Shown piece after piece: positions 2,067 to 54,800 of a stretch of DNA of 64,000 nt. Every line of letters starts with the position of its first letter. The first letter of the stretch is position 1. Location: NCBI GenBank assembly GCA_020536535.1, contig JAHLWZ010000605.1:1-64000 (forward strand). Direction: 5' to 3'. The notes beneath the pieces are model-generated. The model worked only from the letters and a program-made list of their open reading frames with translations. It was not told the DNA's origin and searched no databases. The DNA is from Pelomyxa schiedti (lineage: Eukaryota > Protista > Evosea). A program made the translations under genes and the position numbers.

Positions 2067-4519
2067 ATGGAGATCTGTCGATGTGGTAGACGTGTGGGTG
2101 TTCTGGTGTCGTTCGTAGTCGGAATCTTGTTGTTGGCAATGAGTGCCAATGGCGAAATTGTCAACCTCCGAGTTCATCGCGAAATTGACATCGGTGCCCA
2201 TTTGGCTGTTCATGCGATGCAACTCGAATTTAAGAACCAGGTTTGTCCGCTTCCTTTGTGGTTTTGTTGTTTTGTGTTTTTTTTTTTTTGGATGCTGAAC
2301 TGAGGCTTTGGAAAGGGTGAAGCTGAGGTGTCTACCTACGATTGTGTCATTCCAGCATCCATCAAGGACAACCTTATCTTTCTGGAGGCCAAGTCCGTGC
2401 CTGAACAAAAACAAGAAGAAAATGCACCCCCTGCGACAAATTTACCCGTTCAGGAGCCTATTGAAGACGAAATGTGTGCTCAAGATTGGTGATGTTAACC
2501 TCATATTTTCAAAAGGAAGAACGCTGTTTACACCATCACACTGGAGCACCCTGTTGCCGCAAATGCTACATGCACTTTGAACATTGTACTGGCCTATTCC
2601 CATTTGTTAACCCCTGTCCCAAAGGAAACCAAGCAAGTACTGTTCCATAACTTCAATGGTAAAATGACAATCAGTTGTAGAATGAGAATCAATTCATCGA
2701 GTACAAGGATAATCACTATTTCTATTCACCTTATTTCACCAACTTGGTGGTTACAAATGTGAAACTGCCTGAAAACTCCAAGTACTCAGTTCCCACAGTA
2801 GTAATGAGATAGTTAAAAATAAATTAGGGCAATTAGACGCACAGACCCCAAACCCTCCCAAGCTGAGGTGACGTTTTCCCGTACCTTAATGTATATGAAT
2901 CAAATTACCAACTAAAAAACAACAGAACAACACAATTATGTACGGCCCATTTGAGGCGATAGCACCCTTCTCATTTGAGGAACTACTAGTTCACTTCCCA
3001 AGCAATGCACTTCTTATCACAGTCACACGGTACCTCATAAAATACTTTTTTCCCTGCTAATCATGGAAGTCTTGAGCGTGATATTGAAGTGTCGCATTGG
3101 GGCAATGTTGCCATTGAAGAACGTTATTGGGTACGCCATGATGGTGCTGAGCTCAAAGGTGCCTTCAGTAGATACGAGTTACAACGAAATTCCAAGGGGT
3201 CTCCTCTAGCCTTCCCCTACTTCCTACTGGTGAACTCAACGTTCATTTTTGGTTTGTGTTCACGGCACCCAAACAGGAACTTCCAAGGGAAGCCTTTGGT
3301 ATCTACTATCGTGACGAAGTTGGTAACATCTCTACGTCAGAGGTGTTGCCCTCTGATACGGGCATTTCACTTCAGCTGGTCCCCAGGTTCCCCCTGTTTG
3401 GCGGGTGGCAAGTCTCTTTCACCGTTGGCTACAACTTGCCACTCTCTTCAGTTGTCCGAAAGAGCAGTTCTTCAATGGGTTCATACAGACTCGAATCTCA
3501 TATGCTTTCAAACATCCAACTCGTGGTGGTGGACCATGTTGTGACAAATGTTATTTTGCCTGAGGGTTCATCGTAAGTATCTTCTTTCTGAGGCGGAACA
3601 TTCTGAAACCAATACAGACAACCTGTTGCTAAAACGTCTGTGAAGTCACTTCTACACAATGTGTCATATCATAAATCATATCTTGACACTGTCGGAAGAC
3701 CAGTACTGACTGCTGAAGCTCATAATATTTATCCTCAGTATGGAGCAAGTGTCATCCAGGTCAGTTTTTTTGGTCTATGACATCCACAAATGTTTATTCT
3801 GTTAGGTTGATTACCGGTTCTCAAAAATAGCAATGCTCCAAGAGCCACTGTTACTCATGGCTGGATTCTTTACTCTGTTTGTATTTATCATGGCACTTTC
3901 TCGTTTGGATTTCCGAGTTTCTAAGTGGGCAATTACCCAAACACCGTTATGAGAACTTTCTTATGTGGTTTTCCGCAGTGTTTCCATTGTCGACAAAGAT
4001 ACACTGACTGAAAAGTGTTTGCAAGAGTTTTATGTATTGTGTGACGCCTTCGACTCTCTCTCTGCAAGTGTTGTTGCCAGTTCACAACAGTATTCTCCAC
4101 CTATATGTTCATAGGATTTTAACTTGTTGAAAGACCCGACTCCAAGGACACCAAACAAAAGTTCAGTTCCGAACTCTCTGATACTCTCTCTAGAATGGAA
4201 AAGGTTCTTTTTTTTTTTTCTTTGTTCTGTTACCCACCGGCAAGTAGATTTTGAGCAAGGTTGCCCTTCATGACAGACATCTTGCCAACCACATTAGGGA
4301 AGTTGTAGCCAAGGTTTAGTCACTTTATTGGTTGTTCCTGCTAACCTTTCCACAGCAAAAAGAGAGGAAAACTGCACTTGAGTTTGTGGCCTCTTCCAAG
4401 GTTGCCGGCCCGTAGCTTTAAATGTTCTAAAACAACTATAGGGTCGTGCAACAACGAAGAAGCAATTGCAAAAGATTGAAGCGGAAGTCAGCCAGCGACT
4501 GTCGACTATTTTCTCATGA
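2067..4519 (+). CDS. RPN1: Ribophorin I / oligosaccharyltransferase subunit 1 (multi-exon)
   Basis: Signal peptide '[29 protein letters not shown]', then '[15 protein letters not shown]', 'GAFSRYE', '[13 protein letters not shown]', '[10 protein letters not shown]' and 'VILPEGS'. A TM segment near 3840-3900 and the end '...RLSTIFS*'. Confidence 0.93.
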
Positions 4520-4594
4520 AAAAAACAAATAAAATAAAAATAAAAACAAACAGAGTTATTATCCATTTTGTTCTTTTGAAGAGTGTACAAGTTT

Positions 4595-5062
4595 CTAATG
4601 TCGTGACTCAATCTCTTCACTTGATAGGAAGTAAAGAGGGTGTCTTCTGAAAATCGGCCACGAAGGTACACAAACCTAGGGAAAAAAAGTGAGACTGTGC
4701 AAAAAAAGGGGAATACGAGAGTGAAGAACGCACGAGGAGTGATACTGCAAGGCCCACAAGCACAACAAAAATGGTGAGTCTGAAATCTTGCTGGAAGAAT
4801 CCTGCCAGCCAGCCAACCACCTTGCCAACGTAAGTAACAATGCCAAATCCACGTGCTTCAATGGCACACAACAACAGAAAAATTGCAGGGAAAAATGCGG
4901 AGGGTCAACTGAAAAAAAAAAAGTCTGGCTTGGTTGGGGTTGTGTTACCCCAAATGATATCAAAATGATCTTGAATATGAATTCGGCTTGCTCCTGGCCC
5001 TTGAAGTCCATTTCTGTCTTCATCAGCCCCGTCCACCACTCGTTTAGCCGACTCACCATCAT
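4595..5062 (-). CDS. SPCS1: Signal peptidase complex subunit 1 (SPC12)
   Basis: 'MDFKGQEQAEFIFKIILISFG', 'VVGWLAGFFQQDFRLTIFVVLVGLAVSLL', and last exon 'VCVPSWPIFRRHPLYFL...*'. Confidence 0.88.
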
Positions 5063-5318
5063 TTTTTTGATGATTATGGAAACACCCTACCTTCTTCTGG
5101 CTGTGAGATTCATTGCCCGATGCGTATCATCCAGGTGATTAGTGGCAAAATCTTAGACAACTGGACCTTCTGGGGTCTCCTTTTCGTTCGCCTTTCCTCC
5201 TCTGGTCCAAGAATAGCTGCAATTGCGGTTACATGCCAAACGAAAATCTTCCACTTAATTCTGAGAGAAAAACTGATCTTGGGCATTTTTGATAAAAAAA
5301 AAAGGGAAAGTCAGTTAG

Positions 5319-6307
5319 ATGGCGGACGACGACTACCCCATCGAAGCGTGATCTGGGCGGAACTGCGACAGCTCGCGGCCTCTTCTGGAGGACACCAAGA
5401 AGCCTACATCTGTCGCCGTTGTTGTTGCCGAGGCCCCGCCAGCAGTAGAAGAAGAGGCTGCGGCTGTTGAGGAGAAAGTGAAACAAGCGTCTGTCGGACA
5501 GCCCATGTCTTCCAGTGACAAGAAGGGCATCATTGTTTCTATTCTCACTTTGTGCCTGTCCATCCCTGCTCTGGTAAATTCCCTCTAGTTCGAGATCCGT
5601 CGTTTCTAAGATCTGTGTTTCAGGTGGGCAGCTGATGTTGGCCTCTACTCGTACGCCTTATTCCTTCCGTTTTGTTTGCGGTGTAACCGTAACTCAAAAC
5701 AGGTCTGCACGGCACTGGGGATTGCTTCCTCAGCTGCAGCGGACGAGTTTGCCCATGCTCTCACTTTCGGATTTACGCTGGGTAACTCAAACAAAGCTCT
5801 GCGCTGTAATCTAACAAGTGTCTAGCCCTCCTCACAGGAATCGCACAGTTCGTTTTTTGGAAGGCGTCGGCAAGAAAGTTGGGATCCCACCTCACTCGCT
5901 ATGGCCCTTTTTACTTGTGCTGCATCTCCGTACCCCTCGTGATGGCGGATCTCACCAGACACGTTCTACAGGACTCTGGAATTTGGCCGGCTCCTTATTC
6001 TAACCAATACCGGTATGTTAGAGTGTATTCCTCATTAATGCTAACATCCGTACAGCCCAGGCTGCGACTCCGAAAATGTGACATGCCTGTCAGCAATTGG
6101 GTGGTTCTTCACGATTTTCTGTACTTGGAGTGGCTATGTACACACCCACTCTTAAATGCTTTCCCTTCACAGTTCCTTATGTATTAACCTTTCGTCTTTC
6201 TCTTCTCAACATAGACTTGCCTCATTTGGGGTGTTTTGTGGCTCGCTCAAATACACCTCAAAGTCGCTCTGATCTACAGGAAAATCAAGAACAAACCAAT
6301 GAACTAG
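5319..6307 (+). CDS. Membrane selenoprotein (MSP-like), with in-frame UGA read as Sec at 5633-5635 and possibly at 5349-5351
   Basis: The spliced reading is ...DKKGIIVSILTLCLSIPAL|VGS(UGA)CWPLL|VCTALGIASSAAADEFAHALTFGFTL|ALLTGIAQFVFWK...RYGPFYLCCISVPLVMADLTRHVLQDSGIW...QYR|PGCDSENVTCLSAIGWFFTIFCTWSGY|TCLIWGVLWLAQIHLK...KPMN*. All introns are GT-AG, and a SECIS-like hairpin follows the stop. The MSP family match is from my recollection, not a search. Confidence 0.85.
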
Positions 6308-6399
6308 AGCCCGCTCTATTTCATTTGGTGACAAGGTGGCGTTACCGGGTAGGGAGTGGAACACCTGGGCGTGTGGTGCCGGTTATCTCTGGGGAGTTT

Positions 6400-6476
6400 G
6401 GAAGCTGTGGAAAGTGATGCGGGGAGGTGGTAAATCCACCTATGGACACCCTCCTTGCTGATGATGAGCTGCTTTC
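6400..6476 (+). promoter_or_regulatory. Eukaryotic SECIS element (type II, GUGA variant)
   Basis: G-UGAU (6414-6418), then a stem GCGGGGAGGUG pairing with CACCCUCCUUGC, unpaired AAA (6432-6434), a mini-stem UCCA/UGGA closing CCUA, and 3' UGAU (6459-6462) forming the tandem G.A quartet. It sits about 105 nt downstream of the stop. Confidence 0.85.
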
Positions 6477-6674
6477 TTCTCTCCTCTGTGGCTGTTGTGC
6501 CACTTCACCCACGATGTACCCTCTTTGCCCTTTTAACAACCACCCGTTTCTGTGTTGTTTGCTTTTTTTAAAAAAAAAAAATCTGGCTGGAACGCTCCCT
6601 TTTCTTCACCAAATTGGAAAAACCCCACGGAACGACCGAAACGGTACCACCAGTAAACAAAAGAAGAACCAAAA

Positions 6675-9600
6675 ATGAGCACAGCCGCCGCACCCCCTGC
6701 GGCCACAACGACCACAACGGCTACTACTAGTACGACGAGTACGAGTAGCAGCAGCGGGGGCACGGGCACGGGGAGGGCCAGGGAGCCGGCGTGGGGGGGA
6801 GCGTGGGACGAGGACGACGACCCGGCGGTGGCGACGGAGAAGCTAAGAGCGTTTAGGGAGGAGCTCCTGGCAAAGGACCCTCGCACTACTAAAACTCTGC
6901 AGAGTAATTTTGTTTGTTTGTTTTTATTATCTTGTATTTTTTTTTTTTTTCTTTTATGTCGGCCGTTTTTTTATTTGAAGTTGCACTAATAATGGAAAGA
7001 GGATGAGCAAAAACTCCCTGAGATTCCACCTGAGATATCCAGACTAACAAATTTGGAGGACTTGAGCAGTAATAGCCCCTTTCTCCAAGCTGTTTGATCC
7101 TGAAACTTATTAAATATCTTTTCAGTAAGTTCCAATAATCTTGTGGCACTACCCAAAGAGCTATCCTGTCTCACTCGCCTAAGGGACTTTTGGGGTATGA
7201 TTTACATTTGAAGTGCATTTATTATTTACTGTATTGTAGCCTGCGCCAACTACATCGAGGATATCCCGGAACAAATAAGCGTTCTTACTAGACTGCAAGA
7301 GATAAATTGTGTGAAGCTGTTCCAGGTTTCACGCTTTAACTTTTTACAGTGGGAGGAAACAAGTTAACTGCAATCCCGAGTTGCATTTCCTGCCTCACTC
7401 GATTGGAGAAACTATGGTGTATGTTCTACCTCCTGTTGCCAAAAAAAAAAACTGAAATTCGACCTTACAGTATGGAATAATTCTATTACTGAAATACCGA
7501 ATCATCTTAGTTGTCTCGTCAGACTGGAGACTTTAGAAAGTAGTTGACATTGGGAAAAAACCTCGCCTCACTAATAAAAAGTATATGGGAATTCTCTGAC
7601 ACGAATTTCTTCTGGAATATCGTCATTAACAGCCCTTGAGGAGTTAATATGTATATCTTCCCATTTTATGAGGTCACTCACAAGGTCAAGTGAATGACAA
7701 CAAGTTGACAAAATTACCAGAGGAGATCTCCGGTCTGACAAAACTCAAACATCTGTCATGTATGGGGAAAAAAAAAAAAAACCAAGTCCAATAAACTCTT
7801 CCAACTTCACAGTATATGGAAATGCCCTCCAATCCCTGCCTAATAGCATTAGTCGCCTTACATCTCTGAGGCAGCTACAGTGTATGGAAGTATTCCACCT
7901 CGAGGGTGGATGTGACTATGAATAATCTCCAAACATGATTACAGTGTTTAAGAATCGCCTTCGTGTGTTGCCAATGATGTCTACACTGACTCGTCTGAGA
8001 GAACTTAACCCTGAGAGTACTGGGGATGGCCTCTCAAGTATGCATTACCTTCATTTCTCTGTTTTGATGTAGTCAGTTTGGGAGAATCCATTGCCAAAGG
8101 AAATTCTTCAGTGCAATATACTCTCAGACTTGTGGCGCCTCATTGCTGCCTTACCGGCTACCGAAGAGGTAGGGGTAACACCTGTCATAGCCCCATCTGA
8201 TGCAGAATGCACGTATACAATGTAAGGAACTTGCGCTAATTCTTTCCCTCAGGGCAATTGCGAGATCTGACACAAATTTTGGAAAACTCGAAGCGAGAGC
8301 TGGAAAGCACGAAACGGGAACTAGAACAAGGACGTAGGATCTGCTCTGATCAAGCACGAGAAATCAACAGATTGGACACAAGCAACAACAGACTTAGTAG
8401 CGAAAATAAATCACTTCAAACAGCTCTTGAAACATCAGTCTCTGTCTGTACCAAGTGCGTCAGTATTATGAAAGACATTCATGATAGTGCTCTGCAAACA
8501 GGCATTTACAGACGCTATCAATTACTTCCTTGATAAGTTAAAAAAAAAAAAAAAACCAGGAATCTTTATATCTAAACCTGTACCCGCACCTCCTAGTTTA
8601 CTGAATTTTGTGTGGGCAGGCAAACACAATTCCCCGGAATATGTTCCTGTGGCTGAAAAGCCAGGGGGAGTATCTCCGGGGGCAATATATGAAAAGAAGC
8701 CTACTTGCTTGAAGCCACATCAAGGTTTCAGAATAGATTGTAGAACAACCATTTAAAAATGAATAAATGAAATATAGGAAAGCGTTGGCTGGGGAAAGTT
8801 AGCAATCGCCCTCGCTATACAGTGTATGAGAAAATATCGTCTGATATGCTGCAATTCTTTGGTGTATGTGGCCCTAAGGCACGACTTGCCACTCTTCCAG
8901 TACTGAACCCTTTCACTATGAACCATGAATGGGCAAAGGAGATTGCCAAAACCGAGCCCAAAGCCACTTTCTTTATGTCCAAGTGGATTGACGGTTATAC
9001 TGACATTGGACAACCATTTATTGATGCTATAATAACAACCGGGTCAACTCCAACTGATATCGCAATCAGTTCCGATGGTAGCACCAAATCATTGCCATTA
9101 CGCGGCTTTATGAGGGCCGCAGCCGTCACTAAATTTGTTGCTGACACTGACTTCCTTGGAGGATCCGGCAAAAATGCAGGCTACGTTATACGCAATGAAA
9201 ACGGCAAGCAGTATGCCCAGTTTGTGAAAATTGACACTGGGGAAGCGTTCTCTTTCAGAGATACAACAAATATCGAGAGCGCAAAGAACCTAAGGCATTC
9301 TCAAGACATTTGCATCGCGAACGGAGCTACGAGGAACATTCTTTTCACACAGCTTAACGCAGAGCAGAAAACGGAGTTCCTTCAGACCATGGCCCAGATT
9401 ATAACAGCCCCAGCCTCGGTTTTCGAACTCTTGGTACACCGGGAGGAGAAATTCAAACCGGCATTCCTGGATTCTGAAGTAATTACCCTGACAGACATGC
9501 TGAAAGAGCGGCAGCGCCTTATGATTACCCTGTATGGGCAAGACATTGCAAAGTACCTGGAGGCCCTACAGCTAGCGGCCACTTTACACACGCAAGATAC

Positions 9601-14662: not shown

Positions 14663-14868
14663 CCCCGATTGAGAATGCTTTTTGCATGTATTACCTCAAG
14701 TCTGCACTCATCCTACCACAACTGGAGTACTACCACCTCTATCTATCATTGTTAGCAGTTTTATTATGCTTTTGTATGATCACGAAGGGAAAAAAAAAAG
14801 TCTTGTGTGGGACAAAAACTTTTCTCTAATTGAAAAAAAACACATGTTATGGGTGTGATATGGGATCC

Positions 14869-31548: not shown

Positions 31549-34500
31549 ATGTCCACACCAATTGGAACACCAGACAATACCCCACAGGCCTTACAGCCGC
31601 CATGCACAACCACCACCACGACTACCACAACCACAACCACAACCACCACCACAACAACAACCAGGTCTACGTCCCCAAGCGGCGAGGGCAGCGGGTCCAG
31701 GGGGGGACCAAGGAGGCTTCTGTCGTGCACGCCCCCGCCGCGGCGCGCCATGTCAGCCATGCTGCCGCCTCCCTCGCACTCGCCAACCAACAGCGGCGCG
31801 GCTGCCCCTCCTCGAGGCGGCGGCACTAGCAACAGGGCGTGGTGGGAGGACGAAGACGACGAGGACGAGGAGGCGGGGAGGGGGGGAGCCGCGCCCCAGC
31901 GCCCGTCCCCCTCCCCGTCCTCCTGCTACTCCCCCTCCCCCTCCTCCTCCTCCTCCTCCTCCTCGTCGTCGGGCAGTGAGGGTGGGACTGGGGTCGCAGA
32001 GACTGGCGGCGGCAGCAGGGGCCAGCAGCGCGGGCACGAGTGCTGCCCAAGCGACGGAGGAAGCGGCAAGGATGGCGACAGCAACGGCGGTAGCCGCGAC
32101 GACGACGACGACGACGCGGCCAGCTGCTCGCCCAGGAAGAAGCACCGGGGCTGCTGCGCGGCGAGGAACCAGGACCACGTTCAGAACGCGCAAGGGGCGA
32201 ATGTGTGCACGCCGTTGAAGGGCGGCGGCGGCGGCAGCCGTGGGGCCAGCGACTTCGGCGGCGTGAGCTGCTCGCAGGCGGATTCGGCTTCCAAGGGTGC
32301 TGGCGCTGTGTTCATGAGCCAGCCGGTGTTGAGCACGGGAGTGGGCACCCCAAAAAGGAATTCCTATGTGGAGAAATTCCAATCCCCGCCAAAGACACCG
32401 AAACCTCCACCGGCTTCCGCTCGCAAGGTACTTCAAAAATTCTTGCTTGTATGGTCTGACCAACATCCTATAGGCTGTGAGCTACTTTTCTTCCCCGGAT
32501 GTTAATTCACCTTGGTACACTTTCACAGTACCACTTCTAATAGAGAGCTAATTTCATACACGTCAGTAATTTTCTTTTTCCCACCAACAAAGTTCAGGAT
32601 TTCATCTGGGAGGCATTTGTTGCGGTCTATGTCTACTCCTGTAGTGTGTACCAAGCAACTTTTTGGAGGAGACTTACATATATAGATAACTTCACAAGAC
32701 TTGGCACACCTGGGAGGTGCTGCCAGTTCAGCTTCAGACATTTCTGAAGTATGGGGGGAAGTTGAAGAGATTGTTGTAGACAGGAAAATGCGGTTCTGTA
32801 CACCAAGGAGAGTGCACATCACTGCAGAGAAAATTTCTTTTTCTCCTGTGCGTAGTCCTTTCCCCCATGAAATTGATTGAACATGGTGCATTTCATTTAC
32901 ATCTAACCTAGATTGCTCTTGTTCCACTTGACGCCCTTGACTTTACCAACATTGTTGACATAGCAATGACTGACAGTCCTCCTGCCATTGTTGCACTCCA
33001 GAGGTATCTATAGGAACTAAAGTTACCATCTCACTCTCTTTTCCTCTTCAGTTTAGTAGAAACCCCCCAGCACATCCATAAAACAATATCTATCGTTTTT
33101 GAGCTCAAGAATAAAAACACTCAAGCTAAAATGGCTTCCTTCCGGCGTGCACTTGAAGCAATTCTTTTGAAAGTGACCACCACAAACAAAGATGCACAAG
33201 AACCCTCCGAGCCTGTGTTTCAGATCGGTGAGCCCTGCACGAGTATCACAGAAGACGACCCGCCTACGTTATCTCAAACAATAGACCAACCTCCACTTCT
33301 CCTTCGTCACCTGCAAATTGTTGAAGCGTCTGAACTAAAATCAAGCCACCTCAAGTACTGGAGAATGAAAACGTTTACAACCAGCAAACTCCCAGCTGTG
33401 TTATTTCAGTATATATTGTCGCCTCTGCCGTCTTCACCTAAATCAGCCAAGGTTGTCCACCAGCAGTCACCTGCCTTGACGCCATCCTCCACCTCCTCTC
33501 CTGCTCTCAACCCTTCTGGAATCGATTCCATCATCATTCAAGAAAATACACCAACTCCCGCCACCCCTGACATCACTGGTGCCTCAGAAACTCAAAATAC
33601 ATCTATAGAAATCACTGGCAGTGATTTCACACGCTTAGATCCCGGCAACCTCCTGAATGATACTGTCATCGAATTTTTCTTGCACTATATACAACACCAC
33701 ATCATGCACAGTAGACAACGCAATCGCTTCTACTTTTTCAATACATTTGCATTTGTTCATATTCACAATGGAGCCTGGGAAAGACTTTTGCATTGGATAA
33801 AAGATCAAGACCTCTTTTCCTATGACTACCTAGTAATTCCTGTGCATCACCGGCATGAACGACAGCAACAAACAGAAGTGGAGACTGAACTACCATTGAC
33901 AAATCACTGGAGTATTGTCATAGCATGCCTTTCCCAAGATGGGTTTCGGGATTATGGTAGATGCTTCATTCATTTGGATTCTTTGGGTTCATCCCTTGAG
34001 GAACACAGTGTGGAAAACCTCAAACTGGTTTGCCAATTATATCTTCCTCAAGACTTTCTGACATTCCACAGTTCCTCTCAAAACATTGGCAAAGCAAGTA
34101 CCCATACTCCACTGATTCTTTTTCTGATATGCAAGTTGTAACGCCTTCTCTTCCTATGCAACACAATGGGAGTGACTGCGGTGTTTACTTACTGGGATAC
34201 ATTCTGGCCTTTGCTACAACTTTTCCTTCAAGTCTATGTGATTTCACCTTATGGAAGGGACTACTTGACGCCGTACCATACAACTTGCAGTCCTCCTGGC
34301 CCGTTCACCAGCCTTTGTCACAACAATCCCAGTCACCGTCGCAGCTACAGCGGCGGAGCTCCGGCATAGACTTCTTGAGATATGACATCCAGGAGGTAAT
34401 CGTGTCACTCATGTGCAGCTCCGATTCCCTCGGATTCCACTCACCCGCAACGCAACAGCAGCAGTCAGCTACCCACAGACGCACACCGACACCTCAGCGG

Positions 34501-40522: not shown

Positions 40523-43388
40523 ATGAGTGCACCCACCCACAACAAACGAGGAACGCCGCGTTCACAATCTCTTACTGACACCGTCACAGTTCCGGCACCT
40601 ACAGGTTTCTTCCTTTAATCTATGCTTTAGTATTTTTGCTCCCTGCCCTGAGACATGTTTTTCTTTTTCATTCTTACGATTACACTGTAGTGGATGTAAC
40701 GTGTCCAATTTGCTACGAACAGTACTCCAAACAAGCGCCAAAGATCCCTCGCGTGTTGTCATGCGGACATTATTTTTGTGAAGGTCTGAACAAAAACCCA
40801 CCCTGTATTTTCACAAGGCAACACCTAGTTGCACCTCCACCATAAATCTGAAAGTTAAAAGAGTGTCTGGATCTTGTGTGCACTGCAAGTAATCACGCCA
40901 TATTTTGTATTACATGCAAACAGCAAACACTTATACCAACTGCTGGGCTTTCAGGTTTACCAGTATGCAATTCCATACTAGAAGCAGGTTGCATTTTTTT
41001 TTTTTTACCTTGGTACACACTAAGCCCACACCCATAGCAGCACTCCAAAAATCAAATGCCGCAAACATCCCCACCTCAGTCACGCCACCTTGCACTCCCG
41101 TGGTTTCTTCTGGGCTCAATTCTGCTTCACCTCCTCCCTCCCCGGCCATGGCCACAACCCAACCGCTTCTATCCATCGATTCCACGGATACCGTAAGCGT
41201 AGTTGGCACTGGACACAATGTTTCCGCCATTTGTGAGGAATGCAAAGTCAGGAACGCTACGGTCTATTGTTATAACTGCCCAGGCTCGCTATGCACTGAT
41301 TGTTGCAACGCTTCGCATGTGTCTACTCTACAACAGAGACACCAAAGAGTAAGCATCACCGCTACTCATACAATATGGTAACGGAATCCCATTTTAGGTT
41401 CCTGTTCAGCACGTTCCGAAAAGGAGGTTCTATTGTAAAGAACATCCCAGCCACTCTCTCGATCTATACTGCCAAAATGAGCAAACACTTGTTTGTCCAA
41501 TGTGCTCGGTGGTTGGGTAGTTACTCAATTTCAAAACTGAGGTCTCATCGAATTTAGATCACATCGTGGACATAATGTCTGTGGTATCGAGGAAGCAGCC
41601 TCAGAAATGCGGGAAAAACTTGGTGAGACATTAAAGGAATCTCAGGAAACACTGTCGTCTCTCAAAGATTCATATTCCTCACTTTGTGACCTGTGTGCTA
41701 CCAGTGAGTCTGCAATTGAAAAAGCCTCACTTAAAATACAGGTAATCTCTTTTCATTGTAGTGCCAAAATCCAATAGCACCAAGGATTTCTTTGCCCAAA
41801 TATGTAAAGCGGCGGCAGAGAGAGAAGCAGAACTATTAGCAGAGGTTGTGAAGCAATCAGAGATAAATACTCTTCGTGGTCAAGTCGATGCTGTTGCCTC
41901 AGATATAAGTTCTTTAAAAAGAGTTGTGGCGGAGAGTCGGACATTGCTCACAGGCACAAGTGATTTGGAGCTCTTGTGGGAGAAAGAGTCCCTTATTGAA
42001 AAACTGAAAATGGCAACCACAACACAGTCTACTAAGCCTTGTTTAAATAGTACGCTTAATACCTTTAATCATCTTGTGAATGTAATCTAACTTGCATCAG
42101 AGGTTCCACTTGTACAGTTGACCGACATTACACAAAGCATAAAGGGAGTTGGGGAGATTTTCATGAGACTATGTTCTCTGAACTTGGGAAGTGGGAAAGA
42201 CGGCGCACTGGTGAGCGTCAAGCACGACTCCCCCTTTTCACTCCTTTGCATCGAATGCACGTTCACGCTTCTGCAGATTGTGTCTAGCCATATCGTGCTT
42301 GACTCCGATCGGTGGTATGAGTTTTCGTCAGTGACGGTCACTAAGACCGGCATTCTCACAGCCCAGGCCTGGGATGGGACAACCAAAGGAAATTTCCAAA
42401 TCAGAGTATGCTCACAGCAGAAATCTTTTATGCAAACTCTGTCTTAGGTGTTAAACACCCTTAAAATTGAACAGGGTGGCGTTATTCATATGACTGGAAA
42501 AGGTATCTCCATTTTTCTTGAAACGTACTCAAATAAAATGACAGGCTATCTTGGTGGTGGTTTCGTCACCGAATCAACTCAGGGAGTTGCTTTCCAGGTT
42601 TGCTTTCTCAAAAACAACCCTTGTTTATTTTATTTGTAGGGCGAGTCGACTTGGGGAGTGGGACAACAAGCTACAGAAGCAAACGGTGGCGGCGGAGGTG
42701 GAGGAACTGCCCACCCTGACCATGGAACCACCGGTGGGGGTGGTGGCGGCCATGGAGTATCTGGCTGCAATTCTGAGTTGACTTCTACCGCTGAAGATGT
42801 TATAGGAGGGTCTGGGGGACTACCTTATGGGACACCTGATCTCTCCCCGCCACACATGGGGGCTGGAGGTGGTTCAGGTCATCCATTTTGTGCAGGTTCC
42901 GAACATGCAACCTTTATCCTCCATTCTCATTTTGCTTTCTAGACACAACATCACAGCAACAAGCAGAAAATCCTCAGGAATCTGAGAACACCCTCCGAGG
43001 AAGAGGTGGGTGTGGCGGAGGTATTCTATGCATATGTTCTACAAGGATAGACAATTCCGGAATCATTGTCTGTGATGGTGCTCCCGGTGAGCCTGCAACA
43101 CCACAGACTTTTGGTTCTGGTGGAGGTGGTGGGGCTGGTGGAAGTATATGGATTCAAACAGAGGTTGGTCTTATCCACACTCCGTGCATATATGACATCA
43201 ACTAGGTTTTGCACAACGACGGGCTGATATCTTGCAGTGGAGGGGAAGGTGGTGCCTGTGGCAATCCCAACACCGGACTATGTGGAAATGGCGGAATGGG
43301 TGCTTGTGGCAGGATAAGACTGGATACCCTTACTACGGAAGGGCAAGGCGCAGTCCTACCAGAGCCCCACACAAAAAAACTAGCCTAA
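40523..43388 (+). CDS. TRIM/RBCC-type E3 ligase (RING, two B-boxes, coiled coil) with C-terminal glycine-rich domain
   Basis: RING 'CPICYEQY...PRVLSCGHYFCE..CL...CITC'. B-box 'CEECKVRNATVYCYNCPGSLCTDCC..SH...RH'. B-box 2 'CKEHPSH..DLYCQ...VCPMC..H.GH'. Gly-rich motifs 'GGGGGGG', 'MGAGGGSG', 'GGCGGGIL', 'GGGGGAGGSIWI' and 'GRIRLD'. Confidence 0.85.
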
Positions 43389-46900: not shown

Positions 46901-48557
46901 GAAGAATGCTCATTAGCAACGGATGCAAGTGATTTCCCAAAAGAGTGTCATTAAGGAAATGTACCATAGCCACACAATCACTGAAAAATATTATGGGTGA
47001 ATAAAACAAGAAAAAGAATACTTGAGATTCACATCCGCAGCTTTATTAAGTTCAGCAAGTTCAGCTTGGTCTTCTTCGTGGTCAGCAATAAATGCTTCAA
47101 CCTGAGCTTTTAATTCAGGGCTCGTTTCCCGATTCTCTCTAACAGCCTGTTGAATAATTAACTTATGAAAGCAAAAGTGTTTTAAGAATACCTCAAAAAT
47201 ACTAAGCACACCAAGACGCAGGAAGTCATTTCTGATCTCAACTCTCTCATCCACATCTTGAGTTGAACTAATCAACGAATTCACCAATGTAAGAGCAGTG
47301 ACCTCTCAAAAGATGAGTTAAGAGAAATAGTAAAGTGCAGCAGTACTTTGACAGACAAGTCGGGATCATGTCTGATACAATCCACAAGAAGGGTGAATCG
47401 TATGCGCTCTCTCATAGTATACTTGTAATTAGAAAATGATTCTAGAACAAGTTTTGGCCCCTGAAAGTAACCATTACAAAAAAGTTCACAAACACCCTCC
47501 CATACTAGATCGTGGAACATGGTCATTAATGAAAGAATTTCAAAAAGTAGTTTTTTCGTGGCAGAGTCTGAGTCGACAAGGCAAAGTGCGAGATGGTTAA
47601 CAGAATCTTTTGTACTTGCCATTTCATCTCTCCCTGAAAATGAAGGTAGACTGACGAAAAGAAATAAATGAAATTACCTTCTGGGGTTGCTAAAAGCATT
47701 TTTAAGCACTGCACACACTCAAGCCTGAACTCAAGAAATTCTCCTCTTGGTCTCTCTCTGTGCTTTTCATGCTCGTGGAATAAGAGATTGAGCAAAACTG
47801 GCATGCCTTTCAGTTCTCGAAACGACAGAGCCCACTCGGCAGGTTGGGTGTGAAGACAGGCTCCTATTGTTGTGAGAAAAAAAAAATGTAAGCTCTTAGG
47901 TCCACACTTAGGTCCGTGACGACGAGAACGGTTGGCTCTGCCTGTAATTTGATAATGAAATATCTTGGTGTAAGACGCTCAGATATGCCCGTGAACATGG
48001 TGTCAACATTTTCTCTATGCATTTGAATGAAGTGCCATTTAGATTCCCGGGCCATGGACTTGCTCATGTCATCAATTTGAGCTTTATCAAAGCCCAATTC
48101 TTCAAGTAAATTCGTGAACAAGAATTGCAATTCCTTGTCATCAGGAATTCCGTTCTCCTCATTCATATCAGAGGTTGTGGAGGCAGCTCGAGATCTCATC
48201 TTTTTCCTCTCTTCCTCTCTTTCTTTCTGCAGCTGTTTAGCCAATTTCTTTTCTCTCTCGACAGCCTTCTCCAGCTAAAAGAAATGTCAAGGGGGAGTTG
48301 GAAGGTTTTTTTGTTGTTGTTGTTTTAATTTAACGAGTAAACCCTACCTCCTGCCTTTCCCTCAGCCTCACTTTTTCCCTCCGTTTTTCGTCTTCTTTGG
48401 CCATTTGTTCTTGCTTCTTTCTGGCCTTGTCAGTTAAAGGTGACCCCAATGCTGACGAAGTCAATGATGACGAGGAAGAAGACGAAGACGAAGAAAGTGG
48501 TGCGCCACTGGCAGCGGGTGACGTCACTGAAGTACTCGAAGTCGTCAGTTTGGACAT
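43953..48557 (-). CDS. Diaphanous-related formin (GBD/FH3-FH1-FH2-DAD)
   Basis: 'LFTNLLEELG...ESKWHFI', 'ERVEIRNDFLRLG', poly-Pro FH1 at about 46010-46260, FH2 'FLNEGTPKGNAGGFKL', and DAD-like 'AMQEMMEQLSSGNTFRLR'. Confidence 0.9.
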
Positions 48558-51800: not shown

Positions 51801-54800
51801 GGGATCTCATTTGGCATAAATAAAAGCTGCGTGCTTCAGAAAACACCTATTCAATATTGGATGTGGAAAAACCAATCACAGTTTTACGATAGATTCAGTG
51901 TTGTTCACAGAAACCTGCCAGGTCCAATTCCCAGGATAAAGTGGAAATTCAACAAGGTAACTTTGTTCATTGATTAGAGTGTTCACGAATTGAAAAGTAG
52001 TGCAACCTTGTAGTTGTAGTTGCAGTTGCAACAGAGAAGTGTGTGGTACTGTTGAAGATATACAGTATGGAAATGCAGGGCTTTACATAAGGACAACTTG
52101 TTCCACAATCTGGAGCACTCCACTTTAGGGAAAGAGCTTTATCGAAGTCACGGAGTTCATTTGCCTGCGGTTCCTGAAGAACGGGGGCTACAGGCCCCTT
52201 TCTGACACACACACTAAAAGAGCTCAGCGCGAGTGGTGTGAAGGATGCACCATTGAAATAACGTAGATGCCACTGGTAAGTAGCAACAATGGCGGGGAAA
52301 GAAGACGCTGGAACGTATGAAGAAATAGTGGTATTATAAATCACGTCATCTATGTAGGCAAGCCCAGTGCTGTCAAACACAGTAAAGTCAATGTACGAAG
52401 GGTACACTGAATTACAGTTATCCCCTAAAGGAGGGGCAACCCATGCGAAGGATACTTCGTCATTGGTTACAACAGCTCCAATAGAAGGGACTGTGAGTGT
52501 CGGTGCAACAATCAAAGTGTCTGGAACACAATAGGTGAATGTGCTCGAGGTAACTCCAGAACATTTACTTAGAGTGCACGCTGAAACGGATACAGAGTTC
52601 GCCACCCCATCCACTACAAAGGCATCAAAATATGACTGAGTTACTGGGAAACTATAAGGTTGACTATTGAAAACCACTGAGTATGTCTGAGTTTGATCAC
52701 AGGTTGTTCTCCAAGATGAAGGTTGCTGCCATCTAACAGTTACAGTGGATGACCCTGTGACTTGTCCACTGGGAGTAACATTTTGTGGTGGATAAGGTGT
52801 CTCTACTAAGCAAATGAAGAACGATCTTTCTGATGATGTAGAGAGTAAGGCTCCATTCCATGCCGAGACACGCCACCACCACCATCCTGGAGAGAAGTCA
52901 TCTGTCAAAGATTTAGATGACGTAACAGTTTGATTCCAGGGAGCAGTTGTGCTGTTCCGTACTTCGACGATGAATAGTCTCAAGGTAGTGCCATTACAAA
53001 CTTTACCAAAGGACTTGTATGTTTTCCCCCACTCCAATGTGACAGTTGTAGAAAGGAATGTACTATTCGTGACAGGTGAAGAGAGGAGTGGTGTGTCTGG
53101 GTACGTATTGTTGCATGTTACTGGAACGGAGACAGTCGAATTCGTCGAAACGGTTTTATTTACAGTCACTGTCTGATTCACTATCACAGTGGTATTCATA
53201 GCTACTGTGGTGTTGACAGCAACTGTAGTGTTTACCAATTTGGTGGTATTTACTAACTTCGTGCTATTCACAGTGATAGTGACATTTACTGTACAATTTG
53301 CAAACATAGTTTCACCTGCTGTACATGAAACATAAGTAAAAGTTCCCCCAGAGCAAGCTACCGCTGTTGTGCCATTTGTTGTACAATTCACAGTTTTCGT
53401 CTCATTTACAACAGATACGGTTTTTTCTTCAGATATTGTTACATTTTCTGCAACAGTTGTGTTGATTGCCACAGTTGAATTAATAGTAATCGTGGTGTTC
53501 ATAATGACAGTAGTATTGACGGGAATAGTAGTGTTGACTGAGACTGTACTGTTCACAGGCACCACAGTTGAACTCTGTGGATGGTATTCTATACTGCCAA
53601 TCCCAACACTGCCATGGTGGCCATTACTGGCGACCACATACCACCAGGCTACACCTTCATGTAAGTAAACTGTAAGATTTCCTGATGTATTGGCTTCTCG
53701 TATAAGGATCGTTTCATTGAATACAACAGTAATATTGCATTTCGGTGAGTCAAGGCATGATTGGCCACATGATGGAATATCCCAGGATATTGTAATGTTG
53801 CTTTGCTCTGTGACATACGGAGACCCATTCGGAGTAAGTACTGGCTCATCTGGTGGAACCAATATGCACATTTGAACACTTTGGACGGGAGAAACAGGAT
53901 TTAGCATTCCATTGTGAACCCCCAAGGCCCAATATAAAAACGAAGCTGTTTTATCCACTTCCGTAGGCATGAATTCTGTTGAATTCAGATCCAAAATGGA
54001 GTGCCAATATCGAGAGTCATTGTACGAGGAAATATCATGTGAATACCAAAGCAATAAAGCGGGCTGATCGTATTCACAGTTAAACCCATATGATACACTA
54101 TCCCAGGCAAGAGAAGTCACATCAACAATAAACTTCTCAGATGTAAGCGGGGATAGCAGGACTGGATCAATCTCAGGGTATGACGTGCATAGTCGAAAAG
54201 TATTTAGACTCGTGTTCGTCTGCTTCGCTGTATTGTCTGCTGTCACATACCACATGTGTAACCCAACAGCCACAACAGTATTTATGGATTGACCATGGGT
54301 CGTCCCGATTTGTGAACCATCAAGATAGACAGTATAAATGCCCTCTATTTTTAGAAGGTGAATTGACCGTATTTAAATATAATCGTGTAACCTGTGCCTG
54401 GGCAACTGGTACCCATATTGCTAGTGGGGTACCATGATAAAGATATATTCAGAAAAGAAGTGTTCAGTAAAGGGAACAAGGCTCCATTCAAAGGATATTC
54501 CAATGAAAATGGCCAAGGTGAAGTTGGTGTGCAATAGGTGAAGGTCCAAGTGTCAGATTGCGACGTGTAAATAGTATTACTGGCTACTACATACCAGTTG
54601 TATCCACCGTCCCCCAATGCAGTATTGTGGAGATACGTGGGCACGGTAAGATTGGAAGCAATTCTACTTGGAGAATTGTTCGTCTGACCAAGAAATACAT
54701 CGAACCAGTTGTCAGCAGGATAAAAGAGATTGAATCCTTGTGGTAGTTAATGCGCGAATAGTTGCCTAATACATAAAAGTCTACCTGTTTGCTTGCAGAT

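What the first reader, a model, noticed from the sequence alone, without database searches (positions are those of the whole stretch)
5319..6476. Hidden selenoprotein gene: in-frame UGA (G-S-U-C-W-P) plus a SECIS hairpin in an anaerobic protist
Seen in sequence: a 27-nt exon (5624-5650, AG/GT flanked) continues the frame of exon 1 and contains TGA (5633-5635) followed by TGT-TGG-CCT. Four more in-frame exons encode a multi-TM protein. A SECIS-shaped hairpin lies about 105 nt after the real stop (TAG 6305-6307). Established: eukaryotic Sec insertion requires a 3' UTR SECIS, and a membrane selenoprotein (MSP) family is known in algae and Dictyostelium. Inference: this is an MSP-like selenoprotein that standard gene callers would truncate or mis-splice. 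It implies a complete Sec machinery in a hydrogenosome-bearing anaerobe, whereas Entamoeba is generally regarded as lacking one.
Basis: partly seen in the sequence, partly recalled or inferred. Interest (0 to 1): 0.92.

Follow-up and report, generated by a model that had tools for sequence, protein, structure and literature searches.

The report
Membrane selenoprotein (MSP) gene in Pelomyxa
This is a real, expressed six-exon gene of the anaerobic amoeba Pelomyxa schiedti. It belongs to the already described "membrane selenoprotein" (MSP) family, so its in-frame UGA almost certainly encodes selenocysteine: a good annotation catch, not a new kind of system.

Summary
RNA contigs from four runs (one sample, one study) show all five GT..AG introns exactly as proposed. 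They include the 27-nt exon 5624-5650 with TGA 5633-5635, and they run through the 3'UTR hairpin to about 6554.

The motif PAL-VGS-U-CWPLL is the signature of the MSP family (Lobanov et al. 2007). Every exon matches a family profile in order. In homologs this column holds Cys (5), TGA (5, checked in their DNA) or Ser (1).

The hairpin at 6400-6476 is a type II SECIS: GUGA core, U.U mismatch, 11-bp helix, AAA bulge, mini-stem, 3' UGAU. It closely matches the SECIS of this genome's own thioredoxin reductase gene (which ends GC-UGA-G) and the SECIS of the closest MSP relative.

The genome (52.37 Mb, 5337 contigs, matching the published P. schiedti assembly) has:
- tRNA-Sec, SepSecS, SelD and eEFSec
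- a probable PSTK
- no SBP2 that I could find

Dictyostelium MSP, five environmental homologs and the closest relative all carry an N-terminal Sec there. A two-Sec protein is likely (about 0.65), but RNA does not cover that stretch.

Verdict: new member of a known family. The scan had already noted other selenoprotein genes elsewhere in this genome.

The parts
5319..5573 (+). Exon 1. The CDS starts either at ATG 5319 (two-Sec form) or at ATG 5505 (one-Sec form). It encodes an acidic tail, a PLL motif and TM1 up to ...SIPAL.
   Evidence: RNA contigs cover 5383-5573 only. 5352-5504 is open only in this frame.
5349..5351 (+). In-frame TGA number 1, a candidate N-terminal selenocysteine (M-A-D-D-D-Y-P-I-E-A-U).
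   Evidence: Homologs have TGA at the equivalent N-terminal place. Not covered by RNA contigs.
5574..5623 (+). Intron 1 (GT..AG, 50 nt).
   Evidence: Joint seen in 4 runs.
5624..5650 (+). Exon 2 (27 nt): V-G-S-U-C-W-P-L-L.
5633..5635 (+). In-frame TGA number 2: the selenocysteine codon of the MSP signature G-S-U-C-W-P.
   Evidence: (unchanged in RNA).
5651..5702 (+). Intron 2 (52 nt).
5703..5781 (+). Exon 3 (linker and start of TM2).
   Evidence: Profile positions 47-71, E 1.9e-8.
5782..5825 (+). Intron 3 (44 nt).
5826..6012 (+). Exon 4 (TM2, cytosolic loop, TM3 with RYGP...ADLTRHVLQD).
   Evidence: Profile positions 73-132, E 4.8e-36.
6013..6055 (+). Intron 4 (43 nt).
6056..6137 (+). Exon 5 (loop with C-x7-C, start of TM4).
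   Evidence: Profile positions 134-160, E 3.9e-14.
6138..6214 (+). Intron 5 (77 nt).
6215..6307 (+). Exon 6 coding part (end of TM4, basic tail) with stop TAG 6305-6307.
6308..6554 (+). 3'UTR as far as the RNA contigs reach.
   Evidence: Contigs end at 6545-6554, next to a T/A run.
6400..6476 (+). SECIS element, type II. Helix 1 is 6400-6405/6471-6476. The core is GUGA 6414-6417 with UGAU 6459-6462. A U.U mismatch sits at 6418/6459. Helix 2 is 6419-6429/6447-6458. The bulge is G-U-AAA 6430-6434. The mini-stem is 6435-6438/6443-6446.
   Evidence: Aligns with the TR SECIS of the same genome and has the same build as the SECIS of relative L026. There was no Rfam SECIS_1 hit, but that model finds nothing anywhere in this genome.

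Best explanation
The locus encodes the Pelomyxa schiedti ortholog of MSP, the 'membrane selenoprotein' first described in Ostreococcus, Chlamydomonas, Volvox and Dictyostelium.

How the UGA is decoded: the mRNA is spliced from six exons. UGA 5633-5635 is decoded as selenocysteine by Sec-tRNA(Sec) and eEFSec, recruited through the type II, GUGA-type SECIS hairpin at 6400-6476 in the 3'UTR. Translation then runs on to TAG 6305-6307.

The product: a small membrane protein with four helices and both ends in the cytosol. A Sec-Cys pair sits at the non-cytosolic end of TM1. It is on the same side as the conserved C-x7-C loop between TM3 and TM4 and the invariant D-x2-R-H-x3-D end of TM3.

The likely chemistry, which is inference only: a membrane thiol/selenol oxidoreductase in which the vicinal Sec-Cys pair cycles through a selenenylsulfide, as in the GCUG end of thioredoxin reductase, and exchanges with the loop cysteines.

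A second Sec: most probably (about 0.65) translation starts at ATG 5319, and a second selenocysteine is inserted at UGA 5349-5351 in the acidic cytosolic tail, as in Dictyostelium MSP.

Shown here: gene structure, expression, family membership, Sec/Cys alternation, hairpin anatomy, and most of the machinery. Inferred: actual Sec insertion, the second Sec, topology and chemistry.
For: - Splicing and expression are shown, and the TGA is unchanged in RNA.
- The signature motif is identical to published MSPs.
- Exon 4 finds 124 homolog clusters, best E 4e-14.
- All exons match the family profile in order.
- Five homologs carry TGA at this column and at an N-terminal C-x(2-4)-U, with TAA/TAG as real stops. 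Five others have Cys.
- The closest relative, L026, is an intron-containing gene with DEDCNT-TGA, GS-TGA-CWPLL and a SECIS 82 nt after its stop.
- SECIS: the fold has the canonical shape. In a near-gapless alignment with the TR SECIS of the same genome it shares GUGA, AAA 14 nt after the core, and CUGAUGAU.
- Against the L026 SECIS, 5 of the 11 helix-2 pairs differ on both sides yet still pair (read).
- Machinery: tRNA-Sec 67.9 bits, also called tRNA-SeC(tca) by ARAGORN; SepSecS; SelD; eEFSec domain IV, 34 bits against a cut-off of 27; PSTK-like exons.
- Topology: AF2 model of the Cys homolog P0031, pLDDT 83, read with the positive-inside rule.
Against: - Rfam SECIS_1 gives no hit on the UTR, and the hairpin's MFE z-score is only -1.06.
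- SBP2 was not found.
- RNA contigs begin at 5383-5390, so ATG 5319 and TGA 5349 are not shown to be transcribed.
- Pelomyxa has Tyr where homologs have the Cys of the N-terminal C-x-x-U motif.
- Green-algal MSPs have short N-termini like the one ATG 5505 would give.
- All RNA comes from one sample.
- There is no protein-level evidence.
- No solved or predicted structure of known function resembles the fold, so the chemistry is conjecture.
Confidence: 0.9

Rival explanations
1. One-Sec form only. Transcription or translation starts downstream of 5351, the protein begins at ATG 5505 (M-S-S-S-D-K-K...), and TGA 5349 lies in the promoter or 5'UTR. Everything else is as in the best explanation.
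For: RNA contigs of three runs start at 5383-5390. No ATG lies between 5383 and 5505. Ostreococcus MSPs have equally short N-termini and a single Sec. The Cys partner of the N-terminal motif is missing here.
Against: The frame stays open from 5352 to 5504 only in phase with the CDS. That stretch carries the acidic PLL motif seen in homolog tails. ATG 5319 followed by TGA at codon 11 mirrors Dictyostelium, five environmental homologs and the closest relative, whose protein also begins M-A-D. One contig's 5' end is a Nextera adapter, so the contig ends do not mark transcript starts.
Confidence: 0.3
2. UGA 5633 is read through without selenium, by near-cognate decoding (Trp, Cys or Arg) or by a reassigned code. 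The protein would be full length but not a selenoprotein.
For: No protein data exist. The Rfam SECIS model is silent. SBP2 was not found.
Against: A dedicated tRNA-Sec and most of the Sec pathway are present. This genome's TR gene ends with the classical GC-UGA-G. The UGA falls exactly on the Sec/Cys column of a known selenoprotein family. A SECIS of the genome's own type lies in the UTR.
Confidence: 0.04
3. UGA 5633 terminates translation. The locus would be a decaying pseudogene, or would yield only a 26-residue peptide.
For: UGA is the default stop. Standard callers would stop there.
Against: Four downstream exons keep the frame across four further introns and match the family profile at E 1.9e-8 to 4.8e-36, ordered along the profile. 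All invariant residues are intact. The mRNA is assembled in full in three of the four runs. The gene is single copy.
Confidence: 0.03

Closest known systems
MSP, 'membrane selenoprotein', of Dictyostelium discoideum (Lobanov et al. 2007, Genome Biol 8:R198, PMC2375036)
   Same: It shares the IPALVGS-U-CWP signature, the four hydrophobic helices, the GP...D-x2-RH-x3-D block and the C-x7-C-LS loop. It also has an N-terminal acidic tail with a second UGA soon after the start, followed by a P-L-[LI] motif. Its SECIS is type II with a U.U mismatch right after the core and an unpaired AAA, the features the paper describes for Dictyostelium SECIS elements.
   Different: Pelomyxa has Tyr, not Cys, four residues before the N-terminal UGA, and a Cys five residues after it. 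Its SECIS core is GUGA, not AUGA, and lacks the Dictyostelium UGUA. The gene has five short introns, including a 27-nt Sec exon. The host is a strict anaerobe. 75Se labelling exists for Dictyostelium only.
MSP of green algae (Ostreococcus tauri and O. lucimarinus, Chlamydomonas, Volvox)
   Same: The same G-[SA]-U-C-W-P-L-L motif and the same membrane core.
   Different: The algal proteins have one Sec and no N-terminal C-x-x-U tail.
Unnamed MSP homolog on Logan contig L026 (run SRR10663363, 63% GC, organism not identified)
   Same: It is the closest relative found, with near-identical TM2 (TLALLTGIAQFVF). It starts M-A-D, has an N-terminal TGA and GS-TGA-CWPLL, contains introns, and has a SECIS with U.U, an 11-bp helix, AAA and a mini-stem 82 nt after the stop.
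   Different: It keeps the Cys of C-N-T-U, has an AUGA core, has introns at other positions, and ends with a TGA stop.
C-terminal GCUG redox centre of large thioredoxin reductases (also present in this genome, G000:C693)
   Same: Vicinal Cys and Sec that can form a selenenylsulfide. The SECIS has the same Pelomyxa build.
   Different: The order is U-C, not C-U. The pair is embedded at a membrane helix end, not on a flexible soluble tail. There is no sequence or fold relationship, so this is an analogy only.

Membership tests
MSP (membrane selenoprotein) family | Signature P-[AS]-L-[VIL]-G-x-U-C-W-P at the end of the first membrane helix, with the U encoded by UGA | tested here: met
   The window reads IPAL|VGS-TGA-CWPLL. 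It is identical to the published alignment.
MSP (membrane selenoprotein) family | Homology over the rest of the protein (TM2-TM4, RYGP...ADLTRHVLQD, C-x7-C-LS) | tested here: met
   Exon 4 finds 124 clusters. Exons 1-6 match the family profile in order, with E down to 4.8e-36. The invariant G, P, D, R, H and D are all present.
MSP (membrane selenoprotein) family | Cys or Sec at the UGA column in other members | tested here: met
   Among full-length homologs: 5 Cys, 5 TGA (verified in DNA) and 1 Ser.
MSP (membrane selenoprotein) family | SECIS element in the 3'UTR | tested here: met
   A transcribed hairpin at 6400-6476 has the [A/G]UGA...GA core, an 11-bp helix 2, an AAA bulge and a mini-stem. 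It matches the TR SECIS of the same genome and the SECIS of homologs. Caveat: Rfam SECIS_1 is negative here and across the whole genome, and SECISearch3 was not available.
MSP (membrane selenoprotein) family | Second, N-terminal Sec (Dictyostelium-type members) | tested here: inconclusive
   TGA 5349-5351 is in frame 10 codons after ATG 5319, and the frame is open to 5505. Homologs support it. The RNA contigs start at 5383 or later.
MSP (membrane selenoprotein) family | Selenium actually incorporated (75Se band, as shown for Dictyostelium) | not testable with these tools
   Needs labelling or mass spectrometry.
Eukaryotic selenocysteine-decoding trait | tRNA-Sec gene | tested here: met
   G000:C1146:9231-9316 scores 67.9 bits against a cut-off of 47. 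ARAGORN calls it tRNA-SeC, anticodon tca.
Eukaryotic selenocysteine-decoding trait | SepSecS and selenophosphate synthetase | tested here: met
   SepSecS exons lie on C80, up to 98 bits. SelD lies on C853, 125 bits, Cys type, apparently fused to a NifS-like part. A second SPS-like gene lies on C4.
Eukaryotic selenocysteine-decoding trait | PSTK | tested here: inconclusive
   Two exons on C857 are adjacent along the profile and both best-hit TIGR03575 (24.5 and 35.7 bits). There is a P-loop, but the scores are far below the full-length cut-off.
Eukaryotic selenocysteine-decoding trait | eEFSec | tested here: met
   PF21131 (eEFSec domain IV) hits C87 at 34.1 and 31.6 bits against a cut-off of 27. 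None of the 14 control genomes gives a hit.
Eukaryotic selenocysteine-decoding trait | SBP2 (SECIS-binding protein) | tested here: inconclusive
   The L7Ae search found only eL8, eS12, NHP2 and SNU13. It also missed eL30, so it is not exhaustive.

The most novel reading that the evidence does not exclude
MSP may be a transmembrane redox relay with selenium on both faces of the membrane: a cytosolic N-terminal Sec, and an exoplasmic Sec-Cys pair next to a C-x7-C loop. It would be functionally analogous to DsbB, VKOR or DsbD but with an unrelated fold. Its retention in a strict, hydrogenosome-bearing anaerobe would mean its job is not oxygen-radical defence.
Probability: 0.15. Interest if true: 0.65.

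Novelty: new member of a known kind. Interest (0 to 1): 0.42.

Why it matters
It adds a correctly modelled selenoprotein to the P. schiedti gene set, which has none described. The genome paper never mentions selenium, and four full-text searches found no paper on selenocysteine in Pelomyxa or Mastigamoeba, or one that names Archamoebae alongside selenoproteins.

Together with the TR gene and the machinery genes, it shows that at least one free-living archamoeba still uses selenocysteine. That dates any loss in the Entamoeba line to after their split.

It also widens the known range of MSP, which was described as confined to Dictyostelium and green algae. There are 124 homolog clusters, many of them environmental. 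It gives a same-genome pair of SECIS elements (GUGA type) that can seed a search for the full Pelomyxa selenoproteome.

The function of MSP remains unknown, and a strict anaerobe is a useful contrast case.

Tried and rejected
- Rfam scan of 5000-7000 at E up to 10: no SECIS hit. The same model finds nothing in the whole 52-Mb genome. It is therefore uninformative here, not evidence against a SECIS.
- Strict pattern GTGA-N14-AAAT-N18-26-CTGATGA over the genome: 6 hits against 1 for the reversed control. Only the MSP and TR hits are hairpins. Three of the other four look like paralogous coding sequence and the fourth was not examined. No wider SECIS set was gained.
- Covariance model from the MSP and TR SECIS: abandoned. 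MAFFT put the single gap inside helix 2, so no consistent column structure could be written.
- SECIS search behind the SelD genes on C853 and C4: nothing convincing.
- Pfam on the exons and on full-length homologs: no family.
- ESM Atlas by features: no usable hit.
- Foldseek against PDB, VIA-align wide and atlas fold search on the P0031 model: only generic helical bundles (best Z 8.6, TM 0.44 or less). The DsbB/VKOR idea therefore has no structural support.
- Organism check through the 768-aa ORF: no homologs. Identity came from the assembly statistics instead.
- Paralogs of the gene in the genome: none.
All work on the window's protein was done exon by exon and on either side of each TGA.
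Full report
**Observation**

- An ORF ends at 5573 with ...SIPAL, followed by GT.
- A 27-nt exon, 5624-5650, is flanked by AG and GT. It reads V-G-S-TGA-C-W-P-L-L, with the TGA at 5633-5635.
- Four further exons (5703-5781, 5826-6012, 6056-6137, 6215-6307) keep the frame to TAG 6305-6307.

I laid the contigs of four RNA runs on 5000-7000. All four come from one sample and one study, and all are single-cell transcriptomes.
- Every run that covers a junction shows the same five GT..AG joints: 5573/5624, 5650/5703, 5781/5826, 6012/6056 and 6137/6215.
- There is no exon-skipping joint and no differing letter, so the TGA is present in the RNA.
- Single contigs link all exons to the 3'UTR as far as 6545-6554. 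The mRNA therefore contains the proposed hairpin, and polyadenylation upstream of 6414 is excluded for these molecules.
- The contigs begin at 5383-5390. One of these ends is a Nextera adapter, so they are not mapped transcription starts.

**Organism**

The window's genome has 52,367,397 bases in 5337 contigs. The Pelomyxa schiedti single-cell assembly is described as 52.4 Mb in 5337 scaffolds (PMC8887013). Earlier notes of this scan gave the same name. That paper does not contain the string 'seleno'. Four full-text searches found no paper on selenocysteine in Pelomyxa or Mastigamoeba, or one that names Archamoebae alongside selenoproteins.

**Family**

Every search used single exons or the pieces on either side of a TGA.
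- Exon 4 (61 aa) was scored against 1.84 billion representatives. It gave 124 proteins at E <= 1e-3, the best at 4e-14.
- Pfam has no model for them.
- Full-length members carry P-A-L-[LIV]-G-x-?-C-W-P after the first hydrophobic helix.
- The variable position is Cys in five (P0009, P0031, P0036, P0075, P0099), Ser in one, and 'W' in five.
- I fetched the DNA of the five 'W' proteins. In every one that codon is TGA. A second TGA sits in an N-terminal C-x(2-4)-U motif. Ordinary Trp codons are TGG, and the true stops are TAA or TAG.
- The supplement of Lobanov et al. 2007 (PMC2375036) prints the MSP alignment: O. tauri PSLVGSUCWPLL, C. reinhardtii PALVGSUCWPLL, D. discoideum IPALVGSUCWPVL. Dictyostelium alone has a second Sec near the N-terminus (EDCEGGV-U-ARPEDESTPLI). 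[quoted passage not shown]
- P0062, a Polysphondylium 'hypothetical protein', is plainly the ortholog of that Dictyostelium protein. It is among the hits, and its gene model skips the UCWP segment.
- A profile built from 85 homologs matches the window's exons strictly in order: exon 1 at positions 16-36, CWPLL at 41-44, exon 3 at 47-71, exon 4 at 73-132 (E 4.8e-36), exon 5 at 134-160 (E 3.9e-14), exon 6 at 161-187. The gap at 37-40 is V-G-S-U.
- The nearly invariant G, P, D, R, H and D of RYGP...ADLTRHVLQD and the two loop cysteines are all present.
- The gene is single copy.

Membership in MSP is therefore established on every sequence criterion.

**SECIS**

The minimum-energy fold of 6395-6485 has the textbook type II shape:
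- helix 1: 6400-6405/6471-6476
- an internal loop
- core: GUGA 6414-6417 opposite UGAU 6459-6462
- a U.U mismatch directly above the core
- helix 2: 11 pairs, 6419-6429/6447-6458, with one bulged C
- unpaired G-U-A-A-A: 6430-6434
- a 4-bp mini-stem with a 4-nt loop

The folding energy alone is not remarkable (z = -1.06), and Rfam's SECIS_1 model is silent. However, that model finds nothing anywhere in this genome, although the genome has a classical selenoprotein. The thioredoxin reductase gene on C693 ends ...G-G-C-TGA-G-TAA.

The TR 3'UTR carries a hairpin that aligns almost without gaps to the MSP one. It shares the GUGA core, a mismatch above it, AAA exactly 14 nt after the core, a 3-4-bp mini-stem and the 3' string CUGAUGAU. 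This gives a same-genome standard for what a SECIS looks like here.

Homologs have SECIS-like hairpins 48-73 nt after their stops. One is GUGA type, and two have the U.U mismatch that Lobanov et al. describe for Dictyostelium.

The closest relative, L026, has AUGA, U.U, an 11-bp helix 2, AAA and a mini-stem 82 nt after its stop. Compared position by position with the Pelomyxa helix 2, five of eleven pairs differ on both sides and still pair (read).

My ad hoc descriptor finds 4 matches in the 128 kb of both strands of the window. That gives an expectation of roughly 0.006-0.008 for a 250-nt UTR. The descriptor was written after I had seen the candidate, so the figure is only indicative.

**Machinery in the same genome**

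- tRNA-Sec: 67.9 bits against a cut-off of 47, and ARAGORN calls it tRNA-SeC with anticodon tca.
- SepSecS: exons on C80, up to 98 bits.
- SelD: on C853, 125 bits, Cys type (G-M-G-C-A-C-K). It continues an ORF whose upstream part looks like the end of a NifS-type desulfurase; I read that by eye and did not test it.
- A second SPS-like gene: on C4.
- eEFSec domain IV: on C87, above the Pfam cut-off, with no hit in 14 control genomes.
- PSTK: two exons on C857, adjacent along the profile, whose best family is eukaryotic PSTK. Probable, not proven.
- SBP2: not found. The L7Ae hits are eL8, eS12, NHP2 and SNU13. That search also missed eL30, so it is not exhaustive.

**The overlooked first TGA**

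Evidence for a second Sec:
- From 5352 to 5504 only this frame is open.
- The layout is an acidic start, a UGA within the first 20 codons, then a P-L-L or P-L-I motif after about 9-22 residues, a charged linker and TM1. Dictyostelium MSP and several of the TGA homologs share it.
- The intron-containing relative L026 reads M-A-D-H-K-...-D-E-D-C-N-T-TGA-E-A-P-A-G-A-S, then a GT..AG intron, then E-G-A-A-L-L-P-D... in frame.

Evidence against:
- The RNA contigs do not reach 5319.
- Pelomyxa has Tyr where the others have the motif's Cys.
- ATG 5505 would give a short N-terminus like that of the Ostreococcus proteins.

I put the two-Sec form at about 0.65.

**How it probably works**

Shown: the mRNA, the UGA at the family's Sec column, a SECIS of this genome's type, and the decoding genes.

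Inferred: Sec is inserted at 5633 (and probably at 5349), directed by the single SECIS.

For the protein, I predicted the structure of the Cys homolog P0031 with the 85-sequence alignment (pLDDT 83).
- It has four long helices.
- The S-C-C triplet (S-U-C in Pelomyxa) sits in a helix break at the far end of TM1.
- Basic residues lie before TM1, in the TM2-TM3 loop and in the C-terminal tail. By the positive-inside rule both termini are cytosolic.
- The Sec-Cys pair, the end of TM3 (D-x2-R-H-x3-D) and the C-x7-C loop are then on the other face.
- The acidic P-L-L tail resembles an acidic dileucine sorting signal. This reading is from my own knowledge and was not tested.

A vicinal Sec-Cys pair next to a conserved cysteine pair suggests a membrane thiol/selenol oxidoreductase that cycles through a selenenylsulfide. 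No solved or predicted structure of known function supports or contradicts this: the best VIA-align Z was 8.6, on generic bundles, and atlas TM was 0.44 or less.

**Rivals**

- Termination at UGA is contradicted by four conserved, in-frame, profile-matching downstream exons.
- Non-Sec read-through or a changed code is contradicted by the tRNA-Sec, the pathway genes, the TR C-terminus and the exact coincidence with a Sec/Cys column.
- The only live alternative is the one-Sec variant.

**Verdict**

The finding is a new member of a known family, in a lineage where no selenoprotein has been published to my knowledge. This scan has already flagged several other selenoprotein genes elsewhere in the same genome. 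It is useful for annotation and for dating Sec loss in Archamoebae, but it is not a new mechanism.

Noticed in passing
G000:C693:83745-85404 (+), SECIS at L018:2044-2092: An animal-type thioredoxin reductase gene ends G-G-C-TGA-G-TAA. A GUGA-type SECIS lies about 165 nt downstream. I used it as the same-genome SECIS standard.
   Followed up: partly
L005:1860-2240 (-), = G000:C853 about 68575-68955: The SelD here is Cys type (G-M-G-C-A-C-K). Its ORF continues upstream into what looks like the C-terminal end of a NifS-like cysteine desulfurase, which suggests a NifS-SelD fusion. The upstream part was read by eye and not scanned against any family.
   Followed up: partly
L016:3999-4260 (-), = G000:C4 about 374500-374760: A second SPS-like gene reads W-D-G-TGA-M-T-V-G-T-G-C-K-I-P-Q. 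It has Thr at the usual Sec position (SPS1-like) and an in-frame TGA seven codons upstream. I found no convincing SECIS downstream.
   Followed up: partly
G000:C87:24077-24305 and 32079-32316 (-): eEFSec domain IV matches at two places about 8 kb apart on one contig. This could be a duplicated gene or a duplicated assembly segment.
   Followed up: no
L026:2115-3239 (+) (Logan contig of run SRR10663363, 63% GC): The closest MSP relative is an intron-containing gene with two in-frame TGAs and a SECIS, from an unidentified GC-rich eukaryote. A second run (L027) holds the same gene.
   Followed up: partly
L032:760-1680 (+), = G000:C340 about 4329-5249: The ribosomal protein eL8 (L7A) gene has a long lysine-rich N-terminal extension that contains about 12 tandem P-A-E-K repeats.
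   Followed up: no
window 14776-14812 (+), 47243-47284 (-), 42354-42415 (-): Three other matches to my loose SECIS descriptor. They are probably chance. I did not check for upstream TGA-containing genes.
   Followed up: no
window 51967-54273 (-): A 768-aa open frame has no Pfam family. The word-indexed protein search found no homolog.
   Followed up: partly
window 6676-6800 (+): The next gene downstream seems to start at ATG 6676 with a Thr/Ser/Gly-rich low-complexity stretch. One RNA contig of low depth lies at 6830-6902.
   Followed up: no
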